DNA from: Macrostomum lignano
Taxonomy: Eukaryota
DNA: 64,000 nucleotides
NCBI GenBank assembly: GCA_002269645.1
Contig: NIVC01000827.1
Location: forward strand, 124,001 to 188,000
Direction: 5' to 3'
The position numbers and the translations under genes are program-made. Below the pieces are notes generated by a model. That model was not told the DNA's origin. It saw only the letters and a program-made list of their open reading frames with translations, and did not search any database. This document shows positions 1 to 64,000 of the stretch, in pieces. Position 1 is the stretch's first letter. Every line of letters begins with the position of its first letter.

Positions 1-49
1 TCAGTTGCCAATGCCGATAGCCTGGCCGATCAGAAACCAACAGCAAGCC

Positions 50-12602: not shown

Positions 12603-35396
<22,794 letters not shown>

Positions 35397-36009: not shown

Positions 36010-36766
36010 GGTTGATGAAGATTCGGGCTGGTGAAGATTAACTGGTGAAGATTCAGGTTGGTAAAGATTCGGGCTGGTGAAGATTCGGGCTGGTAAAGAT
36101 TCGGGTTGGTGAAGATTCGGGCTGGTGAAGATTCGGGCTGGTGAATATTCAGGCTGGTGAAGATTCGGGCTGGTGAAGATTCGGGCTGGTGAAGATTCGG
36201 GCTGGTGAAGATTCGGGCTGGTGAAGATTCGGGTTGGTGAAGATTCGGGTTGGTGAATATTCAGGCTGGTGAAGATTCGGGCTGGTGAAGATTCAGGCTG
36301 GTGAAGATTCGGGCTGGTGAAGATTCAGGCTGGTGAAGATTCGGGCTGGTGAAGATTCGGGTTGGTGAAGATTCGGGCTGGTGAAGATTCGGGCTGGTGA
36401 AGATTCGGGCTGGTGAAGATTCAGGCTGGTGAAGATTCGGGCTGGTGAAGATTCGGGTTGGTGAAGATTCGGGCTGGTGAAGATTCGGGCTGGTGAAGAT
36501 TCGGGTTGGTGAAGATTCGGGCTGGTGAAGATTCGGGCTGGTGAAGATTCGGGCTGGTGAAGATTCGGGCTGGTGAAGATTCGGGCTGGTGAAGATTCAG
36601 GCTGGTGAAGATTCGGGCTGGTGAAGATTCGGGTTGGTGAAGATTCGGGCTGGTGAAGATTCGGGCTGGTGAAGATTCGGGTTGGTGAAGATTCGGGCTG
36701 GTGAAGATTCGGGCTGGTGAAGATTCGGGCTGGTGAAGATTCGGGCTGGTGAAGATTCGGGCTGGT
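36010..36766. repeat. 16-bp satellite (GGGCTGGTGAAGATTC), about 47 copies
   Basis: Direct reading. Confidence 0.97.
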
Positions 36767-36960
36767 AAACATTGATTCACTCTAGTCGCGACAGAAAGCG
36801 CACTACAAAACCGGGTAAATAAACTACCGCCTTTGCAAACACAAGTGGAAACTTACAAAATACTTTTAGTGAATCGCTGAAAAAATCAGACTAAATTAAT
36901 GAGGCTACAAGTACAAACGATGATGTTAATATCGATGGAGCTCTCAGCACCGCCAGAGGT

Positions 36961-39702
36961 TCATCCCAATGTGTAGCAAATTCTGTTGAGCTTCTCAATG
37001 AGCTGAGAAGTCCTTAGCATGGCCATAGACAGGCACTGGAGAACTTTGCCCAGCCAGGGGACCACAGCCTGGATGTTCAGCCTGTAGGCAATTTCGTGCG
37101 CATGAGGATGAGGCGCTGCCAGCTGGTTGTGGTGCAAGAAGTACACCGCCAGGATCAGCTTCTGCCCGCTGACGTACAGCGACAGGCAGATGTCGTTGGG
37201 CAACTGAGGCTGGAACAGCTCCTGGGGTGCCGGGTGTGATGAAGGATGCTAAGCATAGTTGAGCTGTAGGTACTTTTATAGAGGCACTCTGATTCTGAAC
37301 TCTTGTGAATTTCGATTCTAAGCACTCTGATTCTAAGCCCTCTAACTCTAACCACTCTGATTCTAAGAACTCTGATTCTAAGCCCTCTAACTCTAAGCAC
37401 TCTGTTTCTAAGCACTCTGATTCTAAGCACTCTGATTCTAAGCACTCTGATTCTAAGAACTCTGATTCTAAGCCTTCTAACTCTAAGCACTCTGATTCTA
37501 AGCACTCTGATTCTAAGAACTCTGATTCTAAGCACTCTGATTCTAAGCACTCTGATTCTAAGAACTCTGATTCTAAGCCTTCTAACTCTAAGCACTCTGA
37601 TTCTAAGCACTCTGATTCTAAGAACTCTGATTCTAAGCCTTCTAACTCTAAGCACTCTAACTCTAAGCACTCTGATTCTAAGCACTCTGATTCTAAGCCC
37701 TCTAACTCTAAGCACTCTGATTCTAAGAACTCTGATTCTAAGCCCTCTAACTCTAAGCACTCTGTTTCTAAGCACTCTGATTCTAAGCACTCTGATTCTA
37801 AGCACTCTGATTCTAAGAACTCTGATTCTAAGCCTTCTAACTCTAAGCACTCTGATTCTAAGCACTCTGATTCTAACCACTCTGACTCTAAGCCCTCTAA
37901 CTCTAAGCACTCTGATTCTAAGCACTCTGATTCCAAGCACTCTGGCATTCTAAACAATCGGATCCAGCATATAAAACATACTGGATTTCTAAGCTAACTG
38001 AGTTCATTCTAAACACTCTGATTTACAGAACTCAGAGTTGTAAAATTCGAACAAACAGACACACTCACGCACACATCACACTCACCCTTGTAGTGCTGCG
38101 GACCAGATCCTCAACTGTGCGTTTCTGCGGCAGCACAATATGATCCCTGGCCTGCTTGAGCAGCTCAAATATTCGACCCAGTGACTGCGGCAAAAAAGTG
38201 AAAATATGATGCTTAAAACCATGAACTGACGCCAAAACTGGAACAGAGGCAGAGCAGAACTCACCGCGATAGTAGGCCTCGGCTCGGAACTTGCAAAGCC
38301 AAACTCAATGGCATCTTGAACTGACAGGCGAACCGCTTGCAGAGCGTTGCAGCAGTTTACCAGCTAAAATAATTGGTTGGGGTTTAAACAATGGCTGATC
38401 ATGTTAACTAACAGGGAGAAGCAATGCCACTGGTGCTTGCGTAACGTGCATTAGAAAACCATGAATCATGCATTTAAGAGTTGTTGATCTAACCAACCAG
38501 TTTGATGAAATCTTTGCTGAGAGCCTTGTATAGTAATAATAACTCATTACACCTGCCCTAATGGCCAGATGTGCAACCGACAGCTCAGCCGCAGGCGCAG
38601 CTATTGCGTGGCGCATCTGAAGGCTGTACGACTTTTCAGTCCAAGGACTGGGGGGGGGGGTCGCCACACGCATTCTCAATTACCCCAGCTAATGCTGGCA
38701 CCCATTTTACAGCTGGCTGAATTGAAGCAATGCAGATCTCAGTGTCTTCCTCAAGGACACAGATTGTTCCAGCGGGATCGGGAATCGAACCTACGACCTT
38801 CAAGTCGTGAGTCCGACGCTCTTAACCACTAGGCTACAACCCCCACTAGGCTACAACCCCCACTAGGCTACAATCCCCACTAGGCTACAACCCCCCCACT
38901 AGGCTACAAGCCCCACTAGGCTACAACCCCACTAGGCTGCAACCCCCTGGATAGTAATATGAACGATCAATCTATTCAGAGAAGTGCTGTGGGGCTATTA
39001 AGGTGAGTCAATTCCGCCCATTCCAGCAGGCTCCTGAGCACGTACAAGCGTGGCAATACTGTACACATGCACAGCACTCATGCCTGCACAGGGTTCTAAT
39101 CGTCAGAGATGTACAGTTACACTCCAGCCAGGCTGCACACCAAATCAAACTAGGGGTTCGTGGCGCGAGAGTCGGAAGCAGTTAGCGCCAAACTGCTCTG
39201 CTTTTTTAAAAAATAAGAATATCATGCAAACGGCTTTTATTTAGCATAAGGATTACCTGCTGCATTCTGTAGCTACAGCCATCAGCAATGACTGTCCTGT
39301 AGGTCTGCTTGTTGGGGCACTCAACACTGATGTCCTATAGGTTGAAAGGACAAAACTGCATTATTAATGCATTATCCTGATGCTCAAATTCCAATGACCA
39401 ATAACACTTACAGCTTCAGTGATTTCATCTGAGTTCATGGTCACCATTGCTTTGAGTCCATTGAGCTTTAAGCTAAAGTTTGAATTGCACAAATAGGCAT
39501 TGTTGAAAATGTGAAATCATTGGTTCTTATTCAGGCTTTTTTAAATAGCTAAAAGTAAGACTTACTCATTGCCACCAAGTATAAATTTTCCTGTTGCACT
39601 TGTTATAATTGAGTTGCATTCATCCACTAAGGTGGTAATTTCATGCAAAGTTGGGGCAAATTCTGTGTCAAGAACCCATTGCAACTCACTCATACTGAGA
39701 AT
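36961..39702 (-). CDS. ROGDI: Protein rogdi homolog; exons 39702-39566, 39472-39412, 39334-39257, 38363-38265, 38184-38086, 37221-36961 (5' end unresolved: ATG at 39693, or an upstream exon near 41252)
   Basis: The spliced peptide (ELQWVLDTE..FILGGND LKLNGLKAMVTMNSDEITEA DISVECP..YRMQQ ..ARDHIVLPQKRTVEDL ..LFQPQLPNDICLSLYVSGQKLILAVYFLH ..AVVPWLGKVL) is collinear with human ROGDI as I recall it ([47 protein letters not shown], VIPWL). All junctions are GT-AG and in phase. Confidence 0.88.
37285..37945. repeat. 15-bp satellite (CTCTGATTCTAAGCA and variants) filling the last ROGDI intron
   Basis: Direct reading; variant units recur in higher-order blocks. Confidence 0.96.
38563..38843 (-). mobile_element. 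tRNA-derived SINE with a CORE-like central segment (most complete copy)
   Basis: On the - strand: A box TAGCCTAGTGG, B box GGTTCGATTCC, then GTCCTTGAGGAAGACACT...CAGCTGTAAAATGGGTGCCAGC, shared with copies at 46971 and 54093. Confidence 0.8.
38844..38945. repeat. Tandem copies (about 6) of the SINE 5' head (ACTAGGCTACAACCCC)
   Basis: The unit equals the reverse complement of the first 16 nt of the adjacent SINE. Confidence 0.85.
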
Positions 39703-41595: not shown

Positions 41596-44570
41596 ATGGT
41601 GCGTTTTCTGCTTCTATTTTGTACTTTTACGGCGCAAATATTTGTTTCGGCTTCTCGGTAAGCATAAGCATACCTAATCCATGTTTTTAACTGTATCAAA
41701 TCTCAGCCAGAGATAAATGTAAATTTTTATCAAAATACGCAGATTCACTTCAATGCAACTCGTTCGAGCTCAATATGTACCATTGTAACGTAAATTACGT
41801 TTTAAACCTATAGGCTAAAAGTTTAACTGTATAAATGTCTAATTTTTTACAGTCGCATATCATGCATGAAAAAGCACTTTAAGTACAGCTTGTAAATTTT
41901 ATCATCATAACACCAGGCTTTCAAAACAATTTACCTAATTATTACATTTAATTAAGCTGCACGTTAATGAACTATGTCCATCTGAATTATAAATTATAAA
42001 TTTAATAATTCTTTTGTGCTTTGGAATTGTTTGCGTAGCTTTTGGAAAAAAATAAATAACTGATCATATATGTACATTTCTAAGAACTTTAAAAGCGGTT
42101 GGAAACACTCATCATAGCAGTTTGTAAAAATGCATGCTATTACTTTATAGTCGAGCTTCTTTTCTTAGTCAGTAATAATTGCAAACTATTTCTAATAATA
42201 AGTACTGGTTGATTGGTCTTACACCAGCGTACTTTCGATCAGCCGCGCATTCTCTTCCAAAAATATTTCAGATTTGAAACTAATCTGTTAGCCGAAGCTA
42301 CAACAACAGCAAACGCACCACCATTTGAGACTATCTACTCACCAAAATCCGCAACACCAGCAACCTCAACACTTAAAAATACAACACCAACAATCAAAAC
42401 TACAACCACAAAACCTACAACATCAACATCGACAACAAAAGCTACAACAACCCTAACAACAACTACAAACACGCTAACAACCACAGCAGTACCAACAGCC
42501 AAAACCACAACCACATTAACAACCAAAACACCAAAAACTAAAACACCAGCAATCAGAACCACCCCGCCAACAACCACAACACCAACAACCACAACACCAA
42601 CAACCACAACACCAACAACCACAACACCAACAACCACAACACCAACAACCACAACACCAACAACCACAACACCAACAACCACAACACCAACAACCAAAAC
42701 ACCAACAACCACAACACCAACAACTAAAACACCAGCAATCACAACCACAACCATACCAACAAACACAACACCAACAACCACAACTCCAACAACCACAACA
42801 CCAACAACCACAAAACCAACAACCACAACACCAACAACCACAACACCAACAACCAAAACACCACCAACCACAACACCAACAACCACAACACCAGCAATCA
42901 CAACCACAACCATACCAACAAACACAACAGCAACAACCACAACTCCAACAACCACAACAATAACGACTAAAACACCAGCAATCACAACCACAATCACACC
43001 AAGAAGCACAACACCAACAAGCACAACTCCAACATCAACCTCAACAACAACCACAGCCGCAATCACACCAAAAACCACAACACCAATAACTACAACACCA
43101 ATAACCACAACGCCAACAACTAAAATACCAACAATCACAACCACCACCACCCCAAAAACTACAACCACAATACGAACAACAAAAACAACACCAACAAAAA
43201 ACATAACACCAACAACTACAACATCAAGAATCAAAACACTAACAAACACAACCACAACCACCCCAACAACCACAATAACAACAAAAACCAGAATACCAGC
43301 AACCACAACACCAAACACCACAAAACGAACAAGCAGGGCTCTAAAAGCCACAGCAACACCAACACAAACACCAACAACCACCACAACACCAACAACCACA
43401 ACACCAACAACTACAACTACAACACCAACACCAACAACTACAACATCAAGAATCAAAACACCAACAAACACAACCACAACCACCCCAACAACCACAATAA
43501 CAACAAAAACCAGAATACCAGCAACCACAACACCAAACACCACAAAACGAACAAGCAGGGCTCTAAAAGCCACAGCAACACCAACACAAACACCAACAAC
43601 AACCACAACACCAACAACCACAACACCAACAACTACAACTACAACACCAACACCAACAACTACAACATCAAGAATCAAAACACCAACAAACACAACCACA
43701 ACCACAACCACCCCAACAACCACAATAACAACAAAAACCAGAATACCAGCAACCACAACACCAAACACCACAAAACGAACAAGCAGGGCTCTAAAAACCA
43801 CAGCAACACCAACACAAACACCAACAACAACCACAACACCAACAACCACAACACCAACAACTACAACTACAACACCAACACCAACAACTACAACTACAAC
43901 ACCAACACCAGCAACTACAACATCCAGAATGAAAACACCAACAAACACAACCGCAACCAACCCAACAACCACAATAACAGCAAAAACCATAATACCAGCA
44001 ACCACAACACCAAACACCACAAAACGAACAAGCAGGGCTCTAAAAACCACAGCAACACCAACAACGATAACACCAACAACCACAACACCAACAAAAACAT
44101 CAACAACCACAACGCAAAGAGCCATAAAACCAGAAACTACAGCACGACCTACCAAAGCACAAGCGGCCATGACAACAAGCGGCATATCAGCCTCAATTCA
44201 ACCGATGATATCACAACAGTCAACAATGTCAACAGCAAAACCAACCAGAAGATCAGTTCAATCAGTCGCTACCGAGCGTCTTAAACAAGATTATTCTGCG
44301 GTAAGTTCCTCAGTTCCATTAAGCAGCGACAGTTTTGCATAGCAGCAAGTATTCATTACGGATGTAAGAGTAGCAAGCACTACACCGCACCGCATCCTGA
44401 CACGTATTTCCTCAGGTGCTGTTAGCCACTCAACTGACACTGTCGGCGCTCTCTCTGACAAAGTTAGCCATCCTGATCGTTGTGTTGGTGTGCATTGTGC
44501 GCGTACGGCGCAGACTGCAGAACAATGTCTACCGAATCCGAATGGAAAGCATCGCGAACAGAGCTAGCAG
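41596..44570 (+). CDS. Thr/Pro-rich type I transmembrane mucin-like protein; exons 41596-41657, 42272-44300, 44416-44570, last exon unresolved
   Basis: Signal peptide MVRFLLLFCTFTAQIFVSAS ends CG|gtaagc (phase 2), matching ttcag|A at 42272. A 2-kb Thr-rich exon ends GCG|gtaagt. The TM exon reads VLLATQLTLSALSLTKLAILIVVLVCIV-RVRRR and ends AG|gtaagg. Confidence 0.75.
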
Positions 44571-47819: not shown

Positions 47820-48710
47820 AACTGGCACTGATGCACAGGCCATAGATAAACAATGGTACTGATGTACAGGCCATAGATAAACAATGGCACTGATGCACTG
47901 GCCATAGATAAACAATGGCACTGATGCACTGGCCATAGATAAACAATGGCACTGATGCACTGGCCATGGATAAACAATGGCAGTGGCACTGGTGCACAGG
48001 CCATAGATAAACAATGGCACTGATGCACTGGCCATAGATAAACAATGGCACTGATGCACTGGCAATAGATAAACAATGGCACTGATGCACTGGCCATAGA
48101 TAAACAATGGCACTGATGCACTGGCCATAGATAAACAATGGCACTGATGCACTGGCCATAGATAAACAATGGTACTGATGCACTGGCCATAGATAAACAA
48201 TGGCACTGATGCACAGGCCATAGATAAACAACTGGCCATACTGATGCACAGGCCATAGATAACCAACTGGCCATAGACACTGATGCACAGGCCATAGATA
48301 AACAATGGCACTGATGCACAGGCCATAGATAAACAATGGCACTGGTGCACTGGCCATAGATAAACAATGACACTGATGCTCTGGCCATAGATAAACAATG
48401 GCACTGATGCACAGGCCATAGATAAACAATGGCACTGGTGCACTGGCCATAGATAAACAATGGCACTGATGCTCTGGCCATAGATAAACAATGACACTGA
48501 TGCACTGGCCATAGATAAACAATGGCACTGGTGCACTGGCCATAGATAAACAATGGCACTGATGCACAGGCCATAGATAAACAATGGCACTGGTGCACTG
48601 GCCATAGATAAACAATGACACTGATGCACTGGCCATAGATAAACAATGGCACTGATGCACAGGCCATAGATAAACAATGGCACTGATGCACTGGCCATAG
48701 ATAAACAATG
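47820..48710. repeat. 31-bp satellite (GGCCATAGATAAACAATGGCACTGATGCACT), about 28 copies
   Basis: Direct reading. Confidence 0.96.
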
Positions 48711-49697: not shown

Positions 49698-52600
49698 ATG
49701 GACACGAGACATCTAATAGCAATTTGGCTTACTGCCTTCTTGGTAAGTTAGTGACAGATTTTTTAAGTGATTTTCGTTGTCTTGAAGCAGTTCTCCAACA
49801 AACCCATGATCCATTCATTTCAGTCATTTCAGCCGCTTGCAAGCTCGTCCGCAGCGAGTGGAGCAGTACACGTGAAATTCGACTCGTATCGACAGAGAGA
49901 CCGAGGCAGCTGCGACCGGAGCTTCTTTGGAAGTGACCACTGCGACCCGTACTTTCTCATATCCGTGTCGACGCCAAGGAAAATTCTGGCAACCTTCGTT
50001 TCGTCTGAATACGAGAATGCCCCGACAGTGATTCACTTCGGAGATTTCATCGGCCAGCTTATCAACCCTCTGGAGTTTCACTTCACCGGATCGGATCTGA
50101 AGCCCACTGACAATGTCCAAGTGTCGGTCACTGTCAAGGACAAAGACCCCGGAGAGCATGAGCTCATGTGCAGCTTGCACCGCTCCTACAACGCCGCAGA
50201 GCTCCCATTTTTTGCTAACAACTCAGCAAACAGCCGCTGGTCATCGCACCTTACGGAGATCTCTAGCAATGGCCACATCCTGAAACTGGCTGTCTGGATC
50301 GGGTGCAGGCCGAACTTCTACCAAGCTGCCTGTTCGGTGCACTGCGACCCGTCCAGGTTCGGCTGCAGCCCCAACGGCTCTGCGATCTGCCCTGCAGGCT
50401 ACACGGCTCTCAACGGCAGCTGCGCTCCGTCAGACAAGTGTCTGCGGCAGGGACAGGCCTTCTGCCAGAACGGAGGCAGCTGCTCGGAGGACCTGCAAGG
50501 ACGGCCGGTTTGCCAGTGCCCGATGAACTTCACCGGACCTCACTGTCAGCTGGAGACTCACCCGTGCCATCGCAACGCCACGTGGTGCCGCAACGGAAGC
50601 TGCCAGACTTTCAACAGCAACGGCTCATCGGTGTGCGTCTGCGACAAAGGATTCACTGGCTACCACTGCGACCAGGATGTTGACGAGTGCCGCCTGGTGG
50701 CAGGTCTCTGCGGCTCCTATGGCGACTGCGTGAACACCGTGGGCAGCTTCAGATGCGACTGCAGGAGCGGCTTCTCAGGAGCTGTGTGCCAGTTTCAGCA
50801 AACGCCTTTGATGAAGCGAGAGTCAGCACTGGACGATTCACTTCGACACACGAAAGCTTTTAAAGCCTCGAAAACTACTGCTACTGCAGACTCGTTCGCA
50901 CAGGGCCTTGCACCAACCAAGCTGACAACATTCATAGCTCTACTTAGTGGCTCTACTAAAAAAACTTCGAAAATCAATTATGCCACAACAGCCTCGATTC
51001 CGTCCAGTCTTTCAAAAGCTGTTGCACTGGACAGTTCTGCCACAAAAGTATCTACTGCTGCAAGCACAGCGACTCAATTAGCTAACAGAAATCCCCATAC
51101 TAACGCTGAAGCAACAGTACCTTACAGTTTAGCTACTCATGCTAAGGAGACTTCACACAGAGCCACATCTGCTTATACTGCGATCCCTACAGCTGCTTTC
51201 ACAAAAAAACGTACAACAGCAGTGCCTTCAACAACAACAATTGGAGCAGTACACGTGAAGCTCGACTCGTATCGACAAAGAGACCGAGACAGCTGCGACC
51301 GGAGCTTCTTTGGAAGTGACCACTGCGACCCGTACTTTCTCATCTCCGTGTCGACGCCAAGGAAAATTCTGGCAACCTTCGTTTCGTCTGAATACGACAA
51401 TGCCCCGACAGTGATTCACTTCGGAGATTTCATCGGCCAGCTTATCAACCCTCTGGAGTTTCACTTCACCGGATCGGATCTGAAGCCCACTGACAATGTC
51501 CAAGTGTCGGTCACTGTCAAGGACAAAGACCCTGGAGAGCATGAGCTCATGTGCAGCTTGCACCGCTCCTACAACGCCGCAGAGCTCCCATTTTTTGCTA
51601 ACAACTCAGCAAACAGCCGCTGGTCATCGCACCTTACGGAGATCTCTAGCAATGGCCACATCCTGAAACTGGCTGTCTGGATCGGGTGCAGGCCGAACTT
51701 CTACCAAGCTGCCTGTTCGGTGCACTGCGACCCGTCCAGGTTCGGCTGCAGCCCCAACGGCTCTGCGATCTGCCCTGCAGGCTACACGGCTCTCAACGGC
51801 AGCTGCGCTCCGTCAGACAAGTGTCTGCGGCAGGGACAGGCCTTCTGCCAGAACGGAGGCAGCTGCTCGGAGGACCTGCAAGGACGGCCGGTTTGCCAGT
51901 GCCCGATCAACTTCACCGGACCTCGCTGTCAGCTGAAGACTCACCCGTGCCATCGCAACGCCACGTGGTGCCACAACGGAAGCTTAACAGCATCTCATTC
52001 AATAAAAACCGCTTCAACGAAACCCTTCTCAAATACGTCACCTGCAAATACACATGCGACAAGAACATCTGCGAAAACACCTCCGAAAACACCTGCGAGA
52101 ACAACACATGCGACAACAGCATCTACGACAACAGCACCTGCGACAACAGCATCTGCGACAACAGCACCTGCGACAACAGCACCTGCGACAACAACACCTG
52201 CGACAACTACACCTGCGACAACTACACCTGCGAAAACAATACCTGCGACTACAACACCTGCGACAACTACACCTGCTACAACAACACCTGCGAAAACAAT
52301 ACCTGCGAAAACAACACATGCAACAGCACCTGTGACAACACCTGTGAAAACCACGCGTGCAACAACACCTGCGATAACAATACCTGCGAAAACAACAGTC
52401 TTTTCAAACTCTGTCCCTTCAATAAGTGACAGCTCAAAACCTTCTCCAAGAGCGACGGTCACAGCGGCAGGCGCTACATCGGCGTCAGTAATTAAAGATA
52501 CATCAGAATCCCATCAAATCAACAAGCCAACCCAGATTAAGTTTCGTTTCTCGGCTTTAAATATCAAAGTGGTGAGTAAATTTAAGCAATTTAGCGACGG

Positions 52601-52953
52601 TGCATGACGCTCTGGCTGAGTAAAAATGAAATAGATGCAATATGTATTAAAACATATCGCCCCCATTCAGGTTTCCTTAGTTCTGATGATCACCATCGTT
52701 CTGATGCTGTGCATCATGATTGCAGTTATTGTCGGCTTTATTCTCTACCTAAAGAAGAGTACTTTAAGGCATCCGCTCACTCGGACAGTCAATTATCCCC
52801 TGGACGATCGCGAACAGAATGGGTGAGTGGCTGTGAAGTCTTGCTTATTGTCAAACAAGTTCTGACATTTGTATCTGTGCCACCAGGTTCTGGTCTGTAC
52901 TGTACAGAAATCCGAGGTCGGATACGTCAATCGAGGTTGATGGACGTCGCTGA
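49698..52953 (+). CDS. Delta/Notch-ligand-like type I membrane protein, about 1000 aa: SP-[C2-DSL-EGFx3]-S/T linker-[C2-DSL-EGF]-Thr-rich stalk-TM-short tail; exons 49698-49742, 49833(or 49824)-52571, 52671-52822, 52887-52953 (alternative last exon 53148-53328)
   Basis: Signal peptide MDTRHLIAIWLTAFL|PLASSSAA. C2-like region with HCDPYF. Six-Cys DSL-like CRPNFYQAACSVHCDPSRFGCSPNGSAICPAGYTALNGSC. EGF CQNGGSC and calcium-binding EGF DVDEC..CVNTVGSFRCDC. TM VSLVLMITIVLMLCIMIAVIVGFILYL-KK. Confidence 0.8.
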
Positions 52954-54974: not shown

Positions 54975-57900
54975 CTACAGAAGCAGCATCTCGATCTCCT
55001 TCAACGAGTAGTAGTAGCTAAAATTTAGCCTCCAAATAATTCCCTCTGCAAAGGCACCTCCAATGGCATCAGATGAGTCTTTGTACTCGCCGTTCGGGAG
55101 GGTGAAGTGACATTGGCTAAACCACCAGGCACCTTTATACTTTGTTGCGCAGTTGTCAGTAGCCCTGGTGTCGTGATCAGTGAAATAAAGTCAAGACAAA
55201 ACTTTATTTTGGTTCAATAGCACGAAAAATATTACAGGCTGAAAAGCCTGCTTTATATCGAACTATTGGTTATCGATCGGCATACTCACCGCACCCCCCA
55301 ACCCGCGCTAGCAAGTACATGCAGCGAGAGAGAGAGAGAGAGAGAGAAACCAGAACAACGCAACCTAGCCCCGCCCCCAGCGCGCACGCAGGCCAAGCTA
55401 TCACATCCCTCCATGCCAAGACAAAAGCAACAGAACTGGCAACAAAAAAGAAAAAAAAACCCACAACCCAAAAAAACTATCAGTCACGGTCAGATCAAGT
55501 TCACTCGTAGGTCAGTCGATCCGGTGCCCTTGTAGTCCTCTCCGAACGCCGCAGCAGCGGCGGTGGCGGCAGCGGCGGTGGTGGCAGCGGCGGCAGTGGC
55601 AGCGATTGCGGCGGAGGTGGCGCTTCCAACGTTGTCCCCGACGGAGTCAGAAGCTGTGGCGCCGCCCCACTTGACTGGGCTGATCCTGCCGCTTGCTCAG
55701 GTGGGATGACCGCCGGCACCAGGTGGTCGGCATGCCGCCGCACGATGCGCTCGTCGGGCAGGCGGCACTCGTAGGACAGCGGCCCGGTCTGGCGGCTCAC
55801 GGAGGCCGGCGCCCACTTCTCCGGACCGTTGAAGTCACGCACCAGGACGCCGTCGCCTTCTTCGAAGTTGCGATCCCTGGCTCGCAGGTCGTGGTACTCC
55901 TTTTGCGAGTCTTGGCTGCGCCTGACTGTAGCAGAGACATCGGGCCGCACAATGTCTAGAAGCGTCCGCAGCTGCCTGCCCATCATCAGCTGGCAGGGTG
56001 GAGCACCGGTTGTGCTGTGCGGAGTGACCCGGTAGGTCAGCAGGAACCGAGCTAGCCGAAGCTGCAGGGACGCCGGCCGCCCCTTCGCCAGGGCCGCCTT
56101 CACCGTCTGGACCGCTCGCTCGGCCAATCCGTTGGACGATGGATGATATGGAGCCACTTTGATGTGCCGGATGCCGTTACTGGCCAAGAAGTTGCTCATC
56201 TCTTGGCTCACGAAATTCAGACCGTTGTCGCTCACTACGACCTCTGGCAATCCCAGCTGACTGAAAGTCCTTCTCAGCCGATCGATGGTGGCAGCACTGG
56301 TGGCTGACTGGCAAATGTGGACTTCAATCCATTTGGAATGAGCGTCCACCAGTACTAACAGCATTTTTCCCTCGAATGGTCCAGCGTAGTCCATGTGGAT
56401 CCGGGACCACGGCTTGTCCGGCCACGGCCACGGCCGCAGGAGGGCTGGCGGCGGGCAGTTCTGATGACGCTGGCACTCGCCGCAGTTCTGCGACATCTGC
56501 TCGATGTCCCGGTCCAATCCCGGCCACCAGAAATATCCTCGGGCCAGGGACTTCATCCTTGAAGCTCCTTGGTGGCTCTGATGTAGACAGTCGAGCAGCG
56601 CTTGTCGTCCCTGAACCGGCACAATCACACGGTTGCCCCACAGCAGGCAGCCGTCCTCCAAGCTCAGCTCTGCCGCCCTAACTGCATACGGCTGCAGTTC
56701 CGCATCCAGCCGAGGACGCTCTGGCCATCCACCCTGCACGAACCGCAGCACTCGACTGAGCAGCGGGTCCCGCCTTGTCCAGCCGCGAACCTGAGCAGCC
56801 GTCACGGGTCCCTCATTGAACGCATCGATGAGCAGCACTACCTCAGCCGGTGACGGCGTCTCCACTGACTTGGCAGAGGTATGCGTGGAAGTGCTTGATC
56901 CCAAAAATGATCGCCAGGGCTTCCTTCTCTGTCTGCGAATAGTTCCTCTCGGCGTCGGCGAGTGATCGGGACGCGAAGGCAATCGGCCTTTTAAGGCCAT
57001 CAATGCGGTGGCAGATGACGGCCCCGACACCGTATGGCGAACTATCGCACTCCAGAATCATCTCCTTTTTGACGTCGAAATGGACAAGCGCCTGCGAGCT
57101 CAGCAGCAGCTCCTTACTGCGCCGAAAAGCATCGGACTGCGCTTCGCCCCATCGCCAGACAGTTCCTTTCTCGAGCAGCCGGTGCAGAGGAGCCAGAACA
57201 CTGGACAGGTTCGGCAGAAACCGGCCGTAATAGTTGAGGAGGCCCAAGAAACTGCGCAACTGCGTGACGTCCTTTGGCATCGGCGCGTTAACGATCGCGT
57301 TGACTTTGTCACCCATCGGATGCAGGCCCTGGGCGTCAATCCAATGCCCCAAATAGGTCACCGAATCCTCCATGAAGCGGCACTTGTCAAGCCGGCATTT
57401 CAGCCCAGCATCCTTCAGGCGCTGCAGGACGGTCTCCAGATTCTCGAGTTGCTCAGCGTCATCGGCGGCGGTCACCAACACGTCATCAATAAAGGTTGCC
57501 GTATGCTGTGCGCCTTCCAGCAGGCCGTCCATGGTTCTCAGGAAGATTCCAACTGCTGGTGTGATTCCAAACGGTAGCCTCGTATACCTCAGCAAACCCT
57601 TCGAGGTGTTGATGGTGCACAGGCGCTGAGACTCTTCGTCGAGCGGAAGCTGCATGTATGCCTGGCTGAGGTCCAGCTTGGTGAACTTTTGGCCGCCGGT
57701 GAGCTTGGCGAACAACTCCTCAATCCTTGGCAGCGGGTAGCAGTCCATCTCAACATCCTGGTTTACCGTGCACTTGAAATCCGCGCAGATTCTGACGGAG
57801 CCGTCCGACTTCAGCACCGGCACGATTGGGGACGCATACTACGAATCGGAGACCGGCCGCAGGATGCCCTGCTGAATCTCCCGCTCGAGCTGCTCTTCCA

Positions 57901-60317
57901 CCTTGGACTTCAAGGCGAAAGGTACCTGCCGCGCCTTCGTGAACTTGGGTCGCGCCCCGGGCTTCACTTGCAGTTTCAGAGGGTCACCCGTGTAGCAGCC
58001 GAGGCCACTCGAGAAAACGGGGCTGAACTTCTCTAGCAACTTCTGCACTTGCTGATCCTTTGGAGCCGACGCTTCGGGCAGCTGCTTGACGCTCCCCCAA
58101 TTCAACGGCAGCACAGCCAGCCAGTTCCTACCGATGAGGCTGGAACCGGATCCAGATACCACTAGAAGAGGAAGAAGCTACTTGGCTTTACCTGGAATCT
58201 CTGCAGACACGCTGATCTGACCGAGCACGCTGACCGGCTGTCCGCAGTAGTTCCGCAGTCGAATCGGGGTACGCTCGAGCTCAGGAGCCCCGCCCAGCAG
58301 GTCGTGATAGGCTGTAGCCGATATCAGCGATACCGCCGCGCCCGTGTCGATCTCCATCTGACAGGACACTCCGTTGAGCAGGACCGTGGTGATGTACGGC
58401 GGTACCTTGGCAGCTGCACTGGGCAAGGTGTTCAGGGAGCCGCAGTCTTGGCTTTCCTCCTCCACGGCGGCGACTTGCGACCGCGGCTCAGCTCCAGCCG
58501 AATCCGCGCCTCCTCGACAGGCTGCAGCGGTGTGCCCTATCTGCCGCACTTTAAACAGGCCTTCTTCATGAATGGGCACTTCGCCGCCAGGTGTTTCGCT
58601 GACAGACACCTGTAGCACCTTTTCGCAGGTCGCTGAGTCGTTACCGCATTGGTCTGGCCGACTTGGTCTACCGATGCTGCCGAGGCGGCTTGCGGAGTTC
58701 CTGAGGACGAGCCCTTGACCAAGTTGCAGCCCTTGGTTGCCAGCTCCACCGCCTGGGAGATCGCCAGTGCTCTGTCCAGGTCCAACTCTGTCTCGGACAG
58801 GAGTCTGCGCTGTAAGCGATCATCTTGGATGCCAAGCACCAGACGATCTCTCAGCATGGTGCTCAAGCTGTCACCGAAGTTGCAGTGGACAGCCAAACGC
58901 CGCAGTGCCGCCAGGAAGTCGGCCACGGACTCCGAGCTCTCTCGAACGCGCTGGTAGAAGTGGAACCTTTGCACGATCTCTGACGGCTTTGGGTCCCAGT
59001 GATCGTCAAGCTTTTTGCAGATGTTAGCGAAGGAAGCCTCTGAAGGCTTAACTGGGGCCAGAAGACTGGTGACAAGCCTATAGGTGTCCTTGCCGCACAC
59101 GCTGAGGAATACCGCTCGCTTCTTTTCTTCGCTTTCGATTTCATTTGCAATGAAAACTTGTTCAATGCGCTCCTTGTATTGCGGCCAGTCCTCTGTTTCA
59201 GGCTCAAACGGCCCTATGCTACACAGTGGCCCAGTGGCCATCCTCGTCGCCAGTGAAATAAAGTCAAGACAAAACTTTATTTTGGCCCAAAAGCACGAAA
59301 AACATTACAGGCTAAAAAGCCTGCTTTATATTGAACTATTGGTTATCGATCGGCATACTCACCGCACCCCCCAACCCGCGCTAGCAAGTACATGCAGCGA
59401 GAGAGAGAGAGAGAAACCAAATCAACGCAACCCAGCCCCGCCCCCAGCGCGCACGCAGGCCAAGCTATCACAATCAGCGTCCTTCGTGCTTAACTGCATG
59501 CCGTTGTTCTCGTCGAGGCAGTCCCCGATGCCGGCGCTGCCGGAGAAGCCGGACACGCTCAGCCGGTAGTTGTCCGACTCGGGACCCACGGAGAAGCTGG
59601 AGTACTCGGCCCAGTGCTCAGAGTCGTTCCACGCCTTCATCAGGATCCTCAGCTTCCGAGGACCAGAAGCAGTGAGAGCGTGGAGAGAGTTCAGGCCTGG
59701 GAAGATGCGGACGTCATGGCGGTGTTTGTCATTGAAGTCCGAGTTGGAAAAGAAGCGAATGGAGCAGATCTGGGATGCACTCACCGATCCAGTAGTTTCC
59801 GTCGGGTCCCTCGCCAAACTCGCTCTGGTACTGAGTCCAGTTGCGGTAAAAGTCCACTGAGCCGGACACCCTGTGCTGCACGGTGGTCCAGCAGTCTTTG
59901 CCGGCTGTCTGCAAGGTGACACAACAGGTGTGTCAGCTTTTATGCTCTGCGTAAAAGCGTGGCTGTGATGCTGACACATCAAACTGAGTGACTCACCCAC
60001 ACTCGCTGAGCTCCCTTGTTCGCATTGCGGCACTTCCTGCAGTGGCTCAGGCCCAGGCGACACCTGAAGTGAGTGCACAGGCTGGAGCTCTCGCTATACG
60101 CCACTAGGTGCACAGCGGAGTCGCTGCTCGCTGAAATCGCACATTCAGGGTCACTTCGGACAGGCACTGACCTCACGGCCTCGTAGTCGGAGAGGCTTTC
60201 GTGGCTCGCATGCCACAGCTTAGAGTTGGTGGTGGCTTCAGTCAAGTGATGCGGGACTGTAGCGAGCAGCAGCAGCAGCAGAGCGACTTGACGAGCGTTT
60301 TGGAGCTGCATTTTCAT
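54975..60317 (-). pseudogene. PAN-like + FReD copy C, exon 3 interrupted by a Gypsy element; exons 60317-59997, 59908-59785, 59696-59473 + 55175-54975
   Basis: Removing the element and one TSD copy restores an intact 289-aa frame (..STKDAD|HDTRATDNCATKYKGAWW..YSLKEIEMLLL*). Confidence 0.9.
55181..59472 (-). mobile_element. Ty3/Gypsy (Mag / K02A2.6-like) LTR retrotransposon, 4292 bp, defective; 5' LTR 59472-59254, 3' LTR 55405-55181
   Basis: TG..CA LTRs differing at about 9 sites plus the (GA)n length. 5-bp TSD ATCAG at 55176-55180 and 59473-59477. PBS TGGCGACGAGGATGG is complementary to the tRNA-Ser(GCU) 3' end. Gag with two zinc knuckles, protease IDTGA, RT FIDDVL, RNase H and integrase are present. 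Lesions: frameshift near 58540, TAG stops at 58178 and 57839, and a deletion with frameshift near 56870. Confidence 0.95.
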
Positions 60318-61517
60318 CTGGATATGAATAGTGGGTGAAAGCCGTCACCTTACTGCGGATATCCAGGTCTGATGAATGATATTGTGGAGGGAGACGGAGG
60401 GATGTAGAGGGCGGAGGCCCAGCTCATGGCCCGTGCCTAAGACTTACCAGCTACATGTAAGCAGACTCTGCTTTGATCTCTCAGCAATTGCAAAATTCAG
60501 TCCGCAGTGACACAGCAGGCGGACACTGCAGGTTTAATATAAAAGCCCCGAGGCAGAAATATGCAATTAGCAGCGGTCGCCATGGCAACCACGAAGCTAC
60601 TGCTTTCAACAGGGGCTGTCCCTCTCAGAGGCGGTGGGGATGGCTGTGGAGGTGACTGCAGCTCATTAATTTCTGGGTCAGAAGGTGCTGGCAGCTCAGC
60701 TCATTGCGGCCCCACCTCCCTCCCTTCCGGACCGCGCAGGCGGCCTGTGGGAGCGCCGGCCAGGGAGGATATCTTCCCTATTTTCCCACTGGGCTCGTCC
60801 GTGAGGCTGGTAGTTATTTAGTTTATTGGGGCTAGAATTTACAAAATATTGAAATAATTTTGAAGTGGAGGTTGGAGGCTGCGGCATCGGCACTGGAGGG
60901 ATGGGCGCCAATGCAAAAGAATAGGAGAGGAAGAATGCACTGCGGAGATGGGAGGAGGGCAATAAATGTTTTACTGCTGCACAGAGGGTAGTTCGCTGGT
61001 GTGTGCTTACCTTGCTAGGTGGGCTGGCTTGGATTGTGGGGGTTGAACCAGTGGTAAAGTAATTACCTGAGCGTGTGGCTGGACGCTCAAATGCGAAATG
61101 AAAAAGTGCAGCGCATCAACATGGACAAAAATTTGGCATATCAACAACCACATTCTTAGATTGTTAGATAGGGAGACAGATTGGTAGATACGAAGACAAG
61201 TTGGTAGACAGGGAGGCAAACTGGTAGATAAGCTTGCTAAGTAGATAGGTAGTCTGACTACGTATTAAGCTTGCAAATTAGCAAGTAGTTGAAAGCAAAC
61301 TTCGTCAGAGAGCTGCTGCAGTTCTGAACCACTTCGTCGGGTTAGTGGCGCACGCAGGAATTTTGTACTGTGTATTTTCTCTGTCGGTATGGAGCGCTTC
61401 ATTTGACGTAATTTTTTTCAGTATAACAAAATATTTCAGTTTGACAAATTATCGCTTGAACACTCGATTTTTCAAGTTGCAGCAGCAAAAATCTTCTACG
61501 CCATCATGCTGGTGCTG

Positions 61518-62599
61518 TTACAGAAGCAGCATCTCGATCTCCTTCAGCGAGTATTTGGGTCCAAAATGAAAAACCCAAATGACTCCCCGTCCAAAAGCAC
61601 CTCCGATTTCATCAGATGAGTTTTTGTACTCTCCATTTGGATGAGTGCCGAAACCGTTGCTGAACCACCAGGCACCCTTAAAAGCTGTAGCGCAGTTGCC
61701 ATAGGTGGTATCGTGATCGGCGTCCTTAGTGCTGAACTGCATGCCGTTGCTCTTGGAGGTGAGGCTGTCGCCGATGCCGGCGCTGCCAGAGAAGCCGGAC
61801 ACGCTCAGCCGGTAGTTGTCCGACTCGGGACCCACGGAGAAGCTGGAGTACTCAGCCCTGCAGCTGACCTCCGGGACAGCCCTGCAGCTAAGTCAGCCCA
61901 GCGCTCAGAGTCGTTCCAAGCCTTCATCAGGATCCTCAGCTTCCGAGGACCAGAAGCAGTGAGAGCGTGGAGAGAGTTCAGGCCTGGGAAGATGCGGACG
62001 TCATGGCGGTGTTTGTCATTGAAGTCCGAGTTGGAAAAGGAAGCGAATGGAGCAGATCCGGGATGCACTCACCGATCCAGTAGTTTCCGTCGGGTCCCTC
62101 GCCGAACTCGCTCTGGTACTGAGTCCAGTTGCGGTAAAAGTCCACTGAGCCGGACACCCTGTGCTGCACGGTGGTCCAGCAGTCTTTGCCGGCTGTCTGC
62201 AAGGTGACACAACAGGTGTGTCAGCTTTTATGCTCTGCGTAAAAGCGTGGCTGTGATGCCGACACATCTAACAGAGTGACTCACCCACACTCGATGAGCT
62301 CCCTTATTCGCATTGCGGCACTTCCTGCAGTGGCTCAGACCCAGACGACACCTGAAGTGAGCACACAGGCCGGAGCTGGCGTTGAATGCCACCAGGTGTA
62401 CAGCGGAGTCGCTGCTAGCAGCAGCTGAGCACTCGATTTCGGACTCAATGGAGAGCGACCTCACGGCCTCGTAGTCGGAGAGGCTCTCGCGACTGGAATG
62501 CCACTTCTGCACAGAGAAGGCAGCTTCGGTCACGTGACGCGGGACTGCAGCGAGCAGCAGCAGCAGCAGAGCAACTTGGCGAGCGGGTTGGAGCTGCAT
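61518..62599 (-). pseudogene. PAN-like + FReD copy D, frameshifted by a 41-bp insertion in exon 3; exons 62599-62285, 62196-62073, 61983-61518
   Basis: A 36-bp insert at 61857-61892 is flanked by duplicated TCAGC (61852-61856, 61893-61897). Removing 41 bp restores WAEYSSFSVG and a 287-aa frame. The Cys of WWFxxC is also replaced (WWFSNGFG). Confidence 0.85.
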
Positions 62600-64000
62600 T
62601 TGATCTGGATATGGAGTAGTGGGTGAGAGCTGTCATCGCACTTCGGAGTTTCAGGTCTGGTGAGATAATACTTGTAGAGAGAGACCGGGGGATGCAGAGG
62701 GCGCAGGCCCAGTTTATGCCATATGCTCAGCAGACTTACCTGCTAAGCTGACTCTGCTGTAATTTCTCTGAATTCGGAAAAATCTGTCCGCAGTTACACA
62801 CCAGACAGACGCTGCAAGCCAATATAAAAGCCCCGAGTCAGAAATATACAACAGCTGCGGTCGCCATGGCAACCAGGCAGCTACAGCTTTTAACAAGGGA
62901 TGCCTCTCTTAGAGGCTGTTGTGATGGATCCACGCTTGCATCACACTACTACTGCTGGGGGTAAGAATTTACAAATTTATTTTGATTTGTTGGTCATATC
63001 TCATGAACTGAAGTAAATGAGTCACTTAAGCCGTACTTCTTGACTATTTAACAATCGCTCAACAGCCTAAAACTCTCCACAAAAAAAGTCCCACACGAAT
63101 TTCCATTAGCCAAAAACAAAAGCCTTGACATTTTAGGAATGTCTTAGAAAGTTAGGACGGTCAGGACATCTTAGAAAGCCCCCATAATTCTTTTATGGAA
63201 GACATGGCGATTACTCTATGGTGGAACTCTGACCCTAACCCCAAAACTGACCCTTAACCCTAATCATAATACCATGGGTGAGTCTTTGCATTTTAGCAAT
63301 TCCCCCATGAGCTTTGAGCCTCAACTTCTCAGCAGCTTTCTGGTTATCCGAAATCTAAACACAATTCCCCCGTAAGCCTTGACCTGTCAGCAATTCACAT
63401 GAGCACGGTCAACTCATGAGCATTGACATCTCAGCAGCTCCCCCTTGAGCCACAGCATTTCGCAGGGCAGTCCCCCTCGACGTCGATTCCGGTCAGAGAA
63501 CAGTGATATGCGAAATATCGGAGAGCTTATCAGACCATTAAGCGTTTATAATGATTAGCTAAATGTGCTTAACGATTAGCAGAATACTTTAATTTCAACA
63601 TACGACAGATTCTCCACTTTGCAGCGTCCACAAAAACTGAACGGATTGGGAAAACTTTTAGTCAGCCCCGTCTGGATCGGTGTAAAATGTCCGAGTCTGC
63701 AGTTGCCAAGATCAATGTTTGCTTGCAGCGCCAACCCGATGCCGGATGCCAACTCTCACAGGTAAAGCAGCTGCTAGATGTTAGATTGCTTTTTTCACTT
63801 TTACAACTGGGTCTGACTTTTTGCACAATTTCATCTACGATTCTGTACACAATACTGCATGGGTGTCAACTGCAGCATCCAGATCAGGTTCCACTAAGTA
63901 AATTTAGATTGTGGAAATCGACAAACATTGGAGAATAAAAAAATAATATTGGATATACTATTTTCTAGGAAGCCTTGCAAAGTTTGCATGCCTATGGCAA

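What the first reader, a model, noticed from the sequence alone, without database searches (positions are those of the whole stretch)
49860..51984. Double-headed Delta-like protein: recent in-frame duplication of the entire C2-DSL-EGF head
Seen: 49860-50601 and 51243-51984 (offset 1383 nt, 461 codons) are about 742-bp copies differing at roughly a dozen sites. They lie within one exon and are separated by an S/T-rich spacer. Known: Notch ligands have a single N-terminal C2-DSL module that engages membrane and receptor. Inference: a bivalent ligand or adhesion molecule with two reach lengths.
Basis: partly seen in the sequence, partly recalled or inferred. Interest (0 to 1): 0.7.

Follow-up and report, generated by a model that had tools for sequence, protein, structure and literature searches.

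The report
Two-headed Delta-like gene in a flatworm
A gene of the flatworm Macrostomum lignano predicts a membrane protein carrying two near-identical copies of the receptor-binding "head" of a Notch-ligand-like protein; the duplication looks real and young, but nothing yet shows that the second head is used or even that the gene is expressed.

Summary
The repeat is real: window 49857-50601 and 51240-51984 are ungapped direct copies (745 nt, 12 mismatches, offset 1383 = 461 codons) in one open exon. The organism is Macrostomum lignano. A three-exon model gives a 982-aa type I membrane protein: signal peptide, C2-DSL-EGF1-EGF2-cbEGF3, S/T-rich spacer, a second C2-DSL-EGF1 ending after two cysteines of EGF2, a (TTPAT)n mucin-like stalk, TM helix, 25-aa tail. 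C2-DSL identity rests on a family profile (Jagged-1, Delta, DLL1/4; E 1e-16 to 1e-11) and a predicted fold (DLL1/DLL4/Jagged, E about 1e-14). Pfam DSL is below threshold, with no MNNL hit, so it is a very divergent member. The head-plus-EGF cassette is 98% identical to three single-headed 513-aa homeologs at another locus, while all flanks are unrelated; GC3 marks the cassette as imported. All eight changes unique to copy 2 lie at its two ends (p about 6e-6) and its core is unchanged, so neither decay nor selection can be claimed. No independent assembly, read or transcript confirms the junctions. Most likely this is a young in-frame partial duplication inserted into the stalk of a mosaic Delta-like/mucin gene. 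A bivalent ligand remains untested. Interest is moderate to low.

The parts
49698..49742 (+). Exon 1: start codon and first 15 codons of the signal peptide (MDTRHLIAIWLTAFL); donor ttg|gtaagt
   Evidence: Matches residues 1-15 of P0003; sequence read
49743..49823 (+). Intron 1, 81 nt, GC 0.36, gt...tttcag
49824..52571 (+). Exon 2, 2748 nt, one open frame holding both heads, the spacer and the stalk; donor gtg|gtgagt; no strong internal donor
   Evidence: the spacer and stalk are free of stops only in this frame
49857..50601 (+). Copy 1 of the repeat (head 1): C2 about 49860-50294, DSL 50304-50423, EGF1 50439-50546, first part of EGF2 from 50565
49857..50799 (+). 943-nt cassette (head + EGF2 + cbEGF3), 98.2-98.7% identical to the three single-headed homeologs (L001, L002, L003); flanks unrelated; GC3 0.72
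50602..50801 (+). Rest of EGF2 (to 50669) and calcium-binding EGF3 (50676-50789); present only after copy 1
   Evidence: Pfam EGF_CA 3.7e-08; cysteine map
50802..51239 (+). S/T/A-rich spacer, 146 codons (S 13%, T 20%, A 18%), unique sequence, GC3 0.31; its last 28 nt resemble the stalk repeat unit
   Evidence: family D3
51240..51984 (+). Copy 2 of the repeat (head 2): C2 about 51243-51677, DSL 51687-51806, EGF1 51822-51929, EGF2 stub 51948-51984 with two cysteines only; its 8 unique changes are all at the ends
51985..52571 (+). Mucin-like stalk, 196 codons (T 30%, P 12%, A 18%), including a 15-nt tandem array (about 24 units, TTPAT-type) at 52050-52397
52572..52670 (+). Intron 2, 99 nt, phase 0, gtgagt...cattcag
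   Evidence: the acceptor is the one used in P0003
52671..52826 (+). Exon 3: TM helix (52671-52748, VSLVLMITIVLMLCIMIAVIVGFILY), 25-aa tail and TGA; the stop overlaps a possible further donor (aatgg|gtgagt)
   Evidence: 100% match to P0003 residues 244-294

Best explanation
This is a real, evolutionarily young, in-frame partial duplication inside a lineage-specific Delta-like gene of Macrostomum lignano. The gene is a mosaic. Its signal peptide, S/T-rich juxtamembrane region, TM helix and short tail are its own: old, low in GC3, and unrelated to anything else found. Its C2-DSL-EGF1-3 cassette is 98% identical to that of a single-headed 513-aa Delta-like gene present as three homeologs elsewhere in the genome. 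The cassette was therefore recently overwritten by, or imported from, that gene (inferred). A 744-745-nt copy of the first part of the cassette (C2-DSL-EGF1 and a stub of EGF2) was then inserted, in frame, into the S/T-rich region. That insertion split the region into the present 'spacer' and 'stalk' (inferred from the unrelated flanks and from the repeat-like end of the spacer). The predicted product is a 982-aa type I membrane protein. It would hold one complete head at the tip and a second, partial head about 250 residues nearer the membrane, on top of a stalk that is probably O-glycosylated. The distal complete head is the likely working unit, binding membrane and receptor as in other C2-DSL ligands (inferred from family knowledge). 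The proximal head is most likely a recent passenger that has neither been lost nor demonstrably recruited. Its core carries no change of its own, and the only changes sit within 50-80 nt of the two junctions. That pattern fits error-prone repair synthesis at the time of the duplication, or gene conversion that keeps the centre identical.
For: The repeat and the single ORF are shown. The gene model has canonical splice sites and is partly matched by an independent annotation, P0003. Homology to those loci is limited to 49857-50799 and 51242-51984, with unrelated flanks and different neighbouring genes. The two copies share four derived sites against all three homeologs, so they are sister copies. 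GC3 is 0.72 in the cassette against 0.26-0.31 in the spacer and stalk, whereas in the single-headed gene the cassette matches its own exons. Upstream of 49857 the peptide is conserved (SSA-S) but the codons differ at synonymous positions, and identity then jumps to 98%. The left flanks of the two copies differ, and so do the right flanks. The remainders of the 1383-nt unit are not similar to each other, except that the end of the spacer resembles the stalk repeat unit. There are no Ns, no wider duplication and no strong internal donor. The C2-DSL-EGF identity rests on the profile against PDB (Jagged-1 1.2e-16, fly Delta 2.9e-16, DLL1 4e-15, DLL4 3e-11) and on the AF2 model (pLDDT 72) against DLL1, DLL4, Jagged and Serrate (E 6e-15 to 2e-10). 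The eight copy-2-specific changes cluster at the ends (p = 6e-6). Replicative rearrangement mechanisms are reported to be error-prone near junctions (PMC4352052).
Against: There is no independent witness. No protein among 5.8 billion covers the spacer, either junction or the stalk, and the ORF is not on record in other assemblies. The gene appears to be absent from the transcriptome-based Mlig_3_7 protein set, since the head search returned only the single-headed genes and P0003. The only annotation of this locus, P0003, splices from EGF1 straight to the TM exon and so skips the second head. The published assembly of this neopolyploid genome has many scaffolds chimeric between subgenomes (PMC10733133), and the c1-c2 divergence (1.6%) is in the range of the divergence between subgenomes. 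The left end of copy 2 (49857-59) nearly coincides with the left end of the tract shared with the single-headed genes (49848-57), and a simple two-step history does not explain that. Copy 2 leaves two EGF2 cysteines without partners.
Confidence: 0.58

Rival explanations
1. Assembly artefact. The two copies are the same head from two subgenomes (S, L1 or L2), or from two paralogous loci, joined into one contig, so no molecule carries both heads.
For: This genome is a neopolyploid with three subgenomes about 1-2% apart, and 36% of the published assembly length lies in chimeric scaffolds (PMC10733133). The c1-c2 divergence of 1.6% fits homeologs. No second assembly, read or protein confirms either junction. 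The older assembly shows indel errors in this gene family: P0002 is frameshifted, and P0011 and P0020 are fused models.
Against: A false tandem join should repeat the flanks as well. Here the left flanks differ (signal peptide and intron against spacer), and so do the right flanks (EGF2-3 against stalk), as shown. The join would have to fall exactly at the start of the head and exactly at the spacer/stalk boundary, stay in frame, and leave no gap; there are no Ns. The end of the spacer resembles the stalk repeat, as expected if copy 2 was inserted into a continuous region.
Confidence: 0.12
2. Functional bivalent ligand or adhesion protein. Both heads are displayed and used, at two heights above the membrane, and the core of head 2 is kept by selection while its ends adapt to their new context.
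For: The frame is intact over 982 codons. The C2-DSL-EGF1 core of copy 2 has no change of its own in 619 nt, while copy 1 has three there. Both copies keep all C2, DSL and EGF1 cysteines and the invariant Asp pair of the C2 loop. C2-DSL is the minimal receptor-binding unit in solved ligand-Notch complexes (established knowledge; structures 4xl1 and 5uk5 are among the hits).
Against: With about 138 synonymous sites in the core, only about 2.5 silent changes would be expected, so zero changes is also what a short elapsed time gives (P about 0.05-0.08). There is no evidence of expression and no orthologue. The EGF2 stub leaves two unpaired cysteines. The DSL is atypical and below the Pfam threshold, and the tail is only 25 residues and unlike that of the single-headed paralog. 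Even head 1's ability to signal through Notch is therefore unproven.
Confidence: 0.12
3. Dead or dying mosaic locus. The structure is real, but the gene is an unexpressed by-product of cassette copying in a repeat-rich region, on its way to becoming a pseudogene.
For: It is absent from the transcriptome-based protein set of Mlig_3_7. The cassette is compositionally foreign to the rest of the gene. The region is crowded with minisatellites and has a retroelement 2.7 kb downstream. Seven of the eight changes unique to copy 2 alter the amino acid.
Against: There is no stop or frameshift in 982 codons. That includes 342 codons of low-complexity sequence, where the other two frames hold 3-8 stops per segment. 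Splice sites are canonical. Changes on the copy 1 lineage are mostly silent. The locus was called as a gene in another annotation (P0003).
Confidence: 0.15

Closest known systems
Delta/Serrate/Jagged (DSL) Notch ligands, e.g. DLL1, DLL4, Jagged-1, Drosophila Delta
   Same: It has an N-terminal C2 (MNNL) beta-sandwich, a six-cysteine DSL and EGF repeats including a calcium-binding one, and it is a type I membrane protein. The profile and the predicted fold match the solved C2-DSL-EGF structures.
   Different: It has two C2-DSL-EGF1 units in one chain instead of one. There are only three EGFs. The DSL has a shortened C3-C4 loop and scores below the Pfam threshold, and there is no Pfam MNNL hit. 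Long mucin-like S/T/P-rich segments are present, and the tail is only 25 aa. Single-sequence similarity to solved ligands is nil.
Single-headed M. lignano paralogs Mlig025798.g1, Mlig013027.g1 and Mlig008026.g2 (P0001, P0018, P0019; 513 aa)
   Same: The C2-DSL-EGF1-3 cassette is 98% identical at the DNA level. Both have an intron in the signal peptide after codon 15 and another intron just before the TM helix.
   Different: They have one head, a short non-mucin stalk and a roughly 120-aa proline-rich tail. Their neighbours are different (tetraspanin and cadherin), and all sequence outside the cassette is unrelated.
Multi-DSL proteins of cnidarians (1-11 DSL repeats; one with MNNL + 3 DSL) and the two-DSL receptor kinase of Capsaspora
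   Same: They have more than one DSL in one polypeptide (PMC2770060; PMC4810162). P0012, found here, has one N-terminal module plus six DSL repeats.
   Different: In those proteins only the small DSL unit is repeated head to tail. Here the whole C2-DSL-EGF1 module is duplicated once, 233 residues downstream, and the copies are 98% identical, so the event is recent rather than an ancient array.
Membrane-tethered mucins and mucin-stalked adhesion proteins
   Same: The stalk has tandem T/P/A-rich repeats (15-nt unit, about 24 copies; T 30%, P 12%) between the globular domains and the TM helix.
   Different: It has no SEA or other mucin-defining domain, and glycosylation is only inferred from composition.

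Membership tests
DSL (Delta/Serrate/LAG-2) Notch ligands | N-terminal C2 (MNNL) domain | tested here: met
   Pfam MNNL gives no hit and the sequence alone finds no solved ligand. However, a profile built from the window sequence and its direct relatives covers the C2 of fly Delta, DLL1 and DLL4 from about residue 2 (E 3e-16 to 3e-11). The AF2 model (C2 part pLDDT 80-92) matches DLL1, DLL4 and Jagged and then generic C2 domains. The Asp pair D94/D96 is invariant.
DSL (Delta/Serrate/LAG-2) Notch ligands | DSL domain with six cysteines | tested here: met
   The six-cysteine segment is CRPNFYQAAC..C..C..C..C in both copies. It aligns with the DSL of relatives that pass Pfam (P0012 3e-40, P0013 1e-10, P0015 2e-10) and with the DSL of Jagged-1 and Delta in the profile search. 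Pfam on the window protein itself is below the curated cut-off, 22.1 against 24.2 bits.
DSL (Delta/Serrate/LAG-2) Notch ligands | Conserved receptor-contact loop of the DSL (the PRDDxFGH-type stretch between cysteines 3 and 4) | tested here: inconclusive
   By eye against the Jagged-1 sequence printed, the loop here is DPSRFG (6 residues) against RPRDDFFGHYA (11). Only the FG is kept. The identity of the contact residues in Jagged-1 is recalled from the literature and was not tested here.
DSL (Delta/Serrate/LAG-2) Notch ligands | EGF repeats following the DSL | tested here: met
   Pfam EGF 5.9e-08 and EGF_CA 3.7e-08. There are three six-cysteine EGFs after head 1, and one plus a two-cysteine stub after head 2.
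DSL (Delta/Serrate/LAG-2) Notch ligands | Type I membrane topology (signal peptide, one TM helix) | tested here: met
   This rests on the gene model and on inspection: an N-terminal hydrophobic leader and a 26-residue TM helix followed by KK. No dedicated predictor was available.
DSL (Delta/Serrate/LAG-2) Notch ligands | Cytoplasmic tail that recruits ubiquitin ligases for endocytosis-driven activation | not testable with these tools
   The tail is 25 residues and unrelated to the roughly 120-residue tail of the single-headed paralog. No motif model was available.
DSL (Delta/Serrate/LAG-2) Notch ligands | Binds and activates Notch | not testable with these tools
   This needs binding and signalling assays.
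DSL (Delta/Serrate/LAG-2) Notch ligands | One C2-DSL head per polypeptide (canonical architecture) | tested here: not met
   There are two heads in one exon. This is the variant feature.
Cnidarian-type multi-DSL proteins | Head-to-tail array of DSL units without intervening C2 | tested here: not met
   Each DSL here is preceded by its own C2, and the two DSLs are 461 residues apart. Compare P0012.
Mucin-like membrane proteins | Tandem S/T/P-rich repeats in the extracellular stalk | tested here: met
   TRF finds a 15-nt unit in 24 copies at 52050-52397, and the composition is T 30%, P 12%, S 10%. O-glycosylation itself is not testable here.

The most novel reading that the evidence does not exclude
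The gene is expressed and both heads are displayed. The membrane-distal complete head would engage Notch on neighbouring cells, while the membrane-proximal partial head, sitting on a mucin stalk, would engage receptor or lipid at a different height or in cis. That would be a natural two-headed DSL ligand caught within about 1-2% divergence of its birth, with single-headed paralogs in the same genome as built-in controls.
Probability: 0.1. Interest if true: 0.65.

Novelty: new variant of a known kind. Interest (0 to 1): 0.35.

Why it matters
If the structure is real, it is a dated snapshot of how a multidomain signalling protein gains a module. A whole receptor-binding unit was copied in frame into a disordered stalk, in a genome that also keeps three single-headed copies for comparison. 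It also shows a head cassette kept 98% identical between two otherwise unrelated genes, which is a clean small case of gene conversion or cassette import. Macrostomum lignano can be transformed and knocked down by RNAi, so the question is testable: does a second C2-DSL head at a different height change signalling, or is it tolerated baggage? If it is an artefact, it is a useful warning about intragenic repeats in assemblies of this neopolyploid.

Tried and rejected
(1) Haplotypes or homeologs assembled in tandem: not excluded, but disfavoured, because neither flank is repeated and the junctions are in frame at domain or linker boundaries.

(2) Simple tandem duplication of the whole 1383-nt unit: rejected. 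The remainders 50602-51239 and 51985-52622 share only one repeat-unit-like 27-mer.

(3) Other two-headed proteins among the relatives: P0011 (924 aa), P0020 (1041 aa) and P0022 are frameshifted or read-through fusion models of single-headed genes.

(4) An internal intron that would remove head 2: there is no GTRAGW donor inside exon 2. The P0003 model uses a weak ccg|gtttgc donor that exists in both copies and probably reflects errors in the older assembly.

(5) 'Copy 2 as a whole evolves neutrally': I first inferred this from 7 nonsynonymous against 1 synonymous changes and a codon-position Fisher p of 0.0099. I withdrew it when all eight changes proved to lie at the two ends.

(6) Independent witnesses of the junctions: two protein searches (one search was saturated by low-complexity words; one search was a composite query without the repeats) and an exact look-up of the ORF found nothing.

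(7) AlphaFold on the single sequence was unusable (pLDDT 43). The 12-sequence alignment was needed.

(8) Polishing artefact homogenising copy 2 to the majority: rejected, because in its centre copy 2 keeps the two window-specific states against the three homeologs (50396, 50433).

(9) Literature on Delta or Notch in this species: nothing relevant was found.
Full report
OBSERVATION. At offset 1383 the window holds one ungapped direct repeat, 49857-50601 and 51240-51984. It is 745 nt long with 12 mismatches, 98.4% identity. The offset is 461 codons. Both copies lie in one ORF of 946 codons, 49767-52607 on the + strand. The window contains no N, and the cassette is the only long dispersed repeat near the gene.

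ORGANISM AND GENE MODEL. The head finds proteins of the flatworm Macrostomum lignano only:
- P0001 is 513 aa, 98% identical, from the Mlig_3_7 assembly.
- P0002 is 478 aa and is a frameshifted model of the same gene.
- P0003 is 294 aa (UniProt A0A1I8FXK2).

P0003 carries this window's own N-terminus and C-terminus. Mapping it gave a signal-peptide exon at 49698-49742 and a TM/tail exon at 52671-52826. Reading the junctions gave the rest of the model:
- the exon 1 donor is ttg|gtaagt, followed by an 81-nt intron;
- the acceptor tttcag|tca opens exon 2 at 49824;
- the donor gtg|gtgagt closes exon 2 at 52571, followed by a 99-nt phase-0 intron;
- the acceptor cattcag|gtt opens exon 3.

The model encodes 982 aa, in this order:
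- signal peptide;
- C2-like domain (aa 28 to about 172);
- DSL (176-215);
- EGF1 (221-256), EGF2 (263-297) and calcium-binding EGF3 (300-337);
- an S/T/A-rich spacer (341-488);
- a second C2 (489 to about 633), DSL (637-676) and EGF1 (682-717);
- an EGF2 stub with two cysteines (724-735);
- a T/P/A-rich stalk (736-931) that includes about 24 units of a 15-nt repeat;
- a TM helix and a 25-aa tail.

The spacer and the stalk have no stop in the gene's frame, against 6-7 and 3-8 stops in the other frames. No strong donor lies inside exon 2.

IS THE HEAD A C2-DSL-EGF MODULE? Pfam on the window protein finds EGF and EGF_CA above threshold. DSL scores below it (22.1 against 24.2 bits), and there is no MNNL hit. 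The C2+DSL part alone finds no solved ligand. An exhaustive HMMER search of 1.84 billion representatives with that part did find relatives:
- another M. lignano paralog group, P0010 (E 1.7e-21);
- several short proteins (P0012 2.5e-9, P0013 7.6e-5, P0015 3.7e-4).

Those short proteins pass Pfam DSL at the aligned position. A profile built from these sequences matches the following over C2 and DSL together:
- Jagged-1 (1.2e-16);
- Drosophila Delta (2.9e-16);
- Jagged-2;
- DLL1 (4e-15);
- Serrate;
- DLL4 (3e-11).

It also gives faint hits to synaptotagmin C2. AlphaFold2 failed with one sequence (pLDDT 43). With a 12-sequence alignment it gave pLDDT 72 overall and 80-92 in the beta-sandwich. Foldseek placed that model on DLL1, DLL4 C2-EGF3, Jagged-1, Jagged-2 and Serrate (E 6e-15 to 2e-10), and then on generic C2 domains. 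So the module belongs to the C2-DSL-EGF class, but it is a very divergent member. Its DSL loop between cysteines 3 and 4 is 6 residues long against 11 in Jagged-1, by inspection of the sequences. Ability to bind Notch is not established.

WHERE THE CASSETTE COMES FROM. The single-headed gene exists three times in Mlig_3_7 (P0001 = L001, P0019 = L002, P0018 = L003). This matches the three subgenomes described for this neopolyploid, which differ by 2.2% genome-wide and 1.1% in coding sequence (PMC10733133). These three loci are 0.7-1.6% apart in the cassette and about 2% apart in introns.

The window shares with them only two segments: 49857(48)-50799 at 98.2-98.7%, and 51242-51984 at 97.0-97.7%. 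Everything else is unrelated. The neighbouring genes also differ: tetraspanin and cadherin there, against F-spondin-like, retroelement and fibrinogen-like here.

Immediately upstream of 49857 the two genes encode the same peptide with different codons (SSAAS against SSAIS). Both have an intron after codon 15 and another just before the TM helix. They therefore look like old paralogs whose head region was recently homogenised or replaced.

GC3 gives the direction. In the single-headed gene the cassette (0.72) matches that gene's own exons (0.72-0.80). In the window gene the cassette (0.72 and 0.71) sits among a spacer at 0.31 and a stalk at 0.26. One caveat applies: the low-complexity segments have a skewed codon set.

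HISTORY OF THE SECOND COPY. The two window copies share four states against all three homeologs (49869, 50396, 50433, 50597) and are nearest to L002, so one was copied from the other. The flanks of the copies are unrelated, and the remainders of the 1383-nt unit are not similar to each other. The exception is that the last 28 nt of the spacer resemble the stalk's repeat unit. The simplest history is that a 744-745-nt copy of the start of the cassette was inserted in frame into a once-continuous S/T-rich region.

Of the 12 differences, eight are unique to copy 2, two are unique to copy 1, and two are shared with one homeolog each. Seven of the eight copy-2 changes alter the amino acid. Elsewhere in the five-copy tree the ratio is 10 nonsynonymous to 14 synonymous (codon-position Fisher p = 0.0099; nonsynonymous/synonymous Fisher p = 0.041).

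All eight changes lie within 50 nt of the left end or 77 nt of the right end, and none lies in the central 619 nt (p = 6e-6, or 1.2e-4 for a conservative count). The core of head 2 therefore carries no change of its own. Three readings fit, and this one sequence cannot separate them:
- error-prone repair synthesis near the junctions at the time of the event (mechanism reviewed in PMC4352052);
- an older duplication whose centre is kept identical by gene conversion;
- selection on the core with release of the ends.

ARTEFACT OR NOT. I could not reach reads or a second assembly. Three protein searches and an exact look-up found no other record of the spacer, the junctions or the stalk. The only annotation of this locus skips the second head (P0003). 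The older assembly behind that annotation shows frameshifts and fused models in this very family. The published long-read assembly has many scaffolds chimeric between subgenomes.

Against an artefact: a false join would need one contig to end exactly at the spacer/stalk boundary and another to start exactly at the head, in frame, with no repeated flank and no gap. I put the artefact at about 0.12.

COMPARISON WITH WHAT IS KNOWN. Canonical DSL ligands have one head. Proteins with several DSL units are on record in cnidarians (1-11 DSL, and one with MNNL + 3 DSL, whose authors warned of misassembly) and in Capsaspora (PMC2770060, PMC4810162). P0012, found here, is of that kind. A duplicated whole C2-DSL-EGF unit did not appear in my searches. 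The structure is therefore a new architectural variant of a known family, present so far at one unverified locus.

VERDICT. The structural part of the interpretation, two C2-DSL-EGF heads in one reading frame, is supported with corrections. The functional part, a bivalent ligand, is untested. The finding is of moderate to low interest until reads and transcripts are checked.

Noticed in passing
window 49848-49859 and 51240-51242: The left end of the tract shared with the single-headed genes (49848-57) and the left end of the internal copy (49857-59) coincide within about 10 nt, at the first codons of the mature protein. A two-step history (conversion, then duplication) does not predict this. 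It may point to a recurrent breakpoint, or to two imports from one donor.
   Followed up: partly
window 42213-44342 (+): A 709-codon open frame is almost entirely T/P-rich (TTTPTTTT... with 15-, 30- and about 222-nt periodicities). It lies 5.4 kb upstream on the same strand and is weakly similar to the stalk repeat (68% over 130 nt at 43797-43920). It may be a separate mucin-like gene, or a relative of the stalk.
   Followed up: partly
window 55501-59241 (-): Retroelement coding region: integrase (rve, Integrase_H2C2) at 55501-57030, reverse transcriptase and RNase H at 56843-57823 in an overlapping frame, and a gag-like ORF with a zinc knuckle at 58537-59241. It starts 2.7 kb downstream of the Delta-like gene. 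LTRs were not sought.
   Followed up: partly
window 59422-60643 and 61716-62927: A segment encoding a Fibrinogen_C domain (Pfam 3e-15, minus strand) is present twice at 83% identity over about 1.2 kb. This looks like a local tandem duplication of a fibrinogen-related gene.
   Followed up: partly
window 23989-31102 (+): Exons of an F-spondin-like gene that also carries protease-inhibitor domains: Spond_N, spondin-type TSP1 repeats and two Kunitz domains.
   Followed up: partly
window 8014-8868 (+): An exon-sized ORF matches the amiloride-sensitive sodium channel family (ASC, 4e-13).
   Followed up: no
window 2479-4556, 12769-14017, 31764-32633, 33188-33876, 36016-37944, 47823-48710 and others: Minisatellites are unusually dense, with 22 TRF rows scoring at least 200 in 64 kb. 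They include a 46-nt unit in 45 copies and a 31-nt unit in 28 copies ending 1 kb upstream of the gene's start codon. Several create long spurious ORFs in all frames.
   Followed up: no
window 33184-34389 (-): An ORF with a PH-domain match (3.7e-5) runs into a 57-nt minisatellite (33188-33876), which it reads as a 19-residue protein repeat.
   Followed up: no
window 3-349 and 5288-5634: A 347-nt dispersed direct repeat at 98.8% identity; its nature is unknown.
   Followed up: no
P0012 (397 aa; Logan, ENA and JGI environmental assemblies): This protein has one C2-like N-terminal module followed by six tandem DSL repeats (Pfam DSL 3e-40). It belongs to an 11-member cluster and its organism is unknown. 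It resembles the cnidarian MNNL + nDSL genes that Gazave et al. suspected of misassembly, so that architecture appears to be real.
   Followed up: partly
P0002, P0011, P0020, P0022 (UniProt models from the older M. lignano assembly): Public models of this gene family are frameshifted or fused to neighbouring sequence. For example, P0020 runs from the Delta-like gene into cadherin-like sequence, and P0011 has 440 residues of junk before the head. They could mislead domain-architecture surveys.
   Followed up: yes
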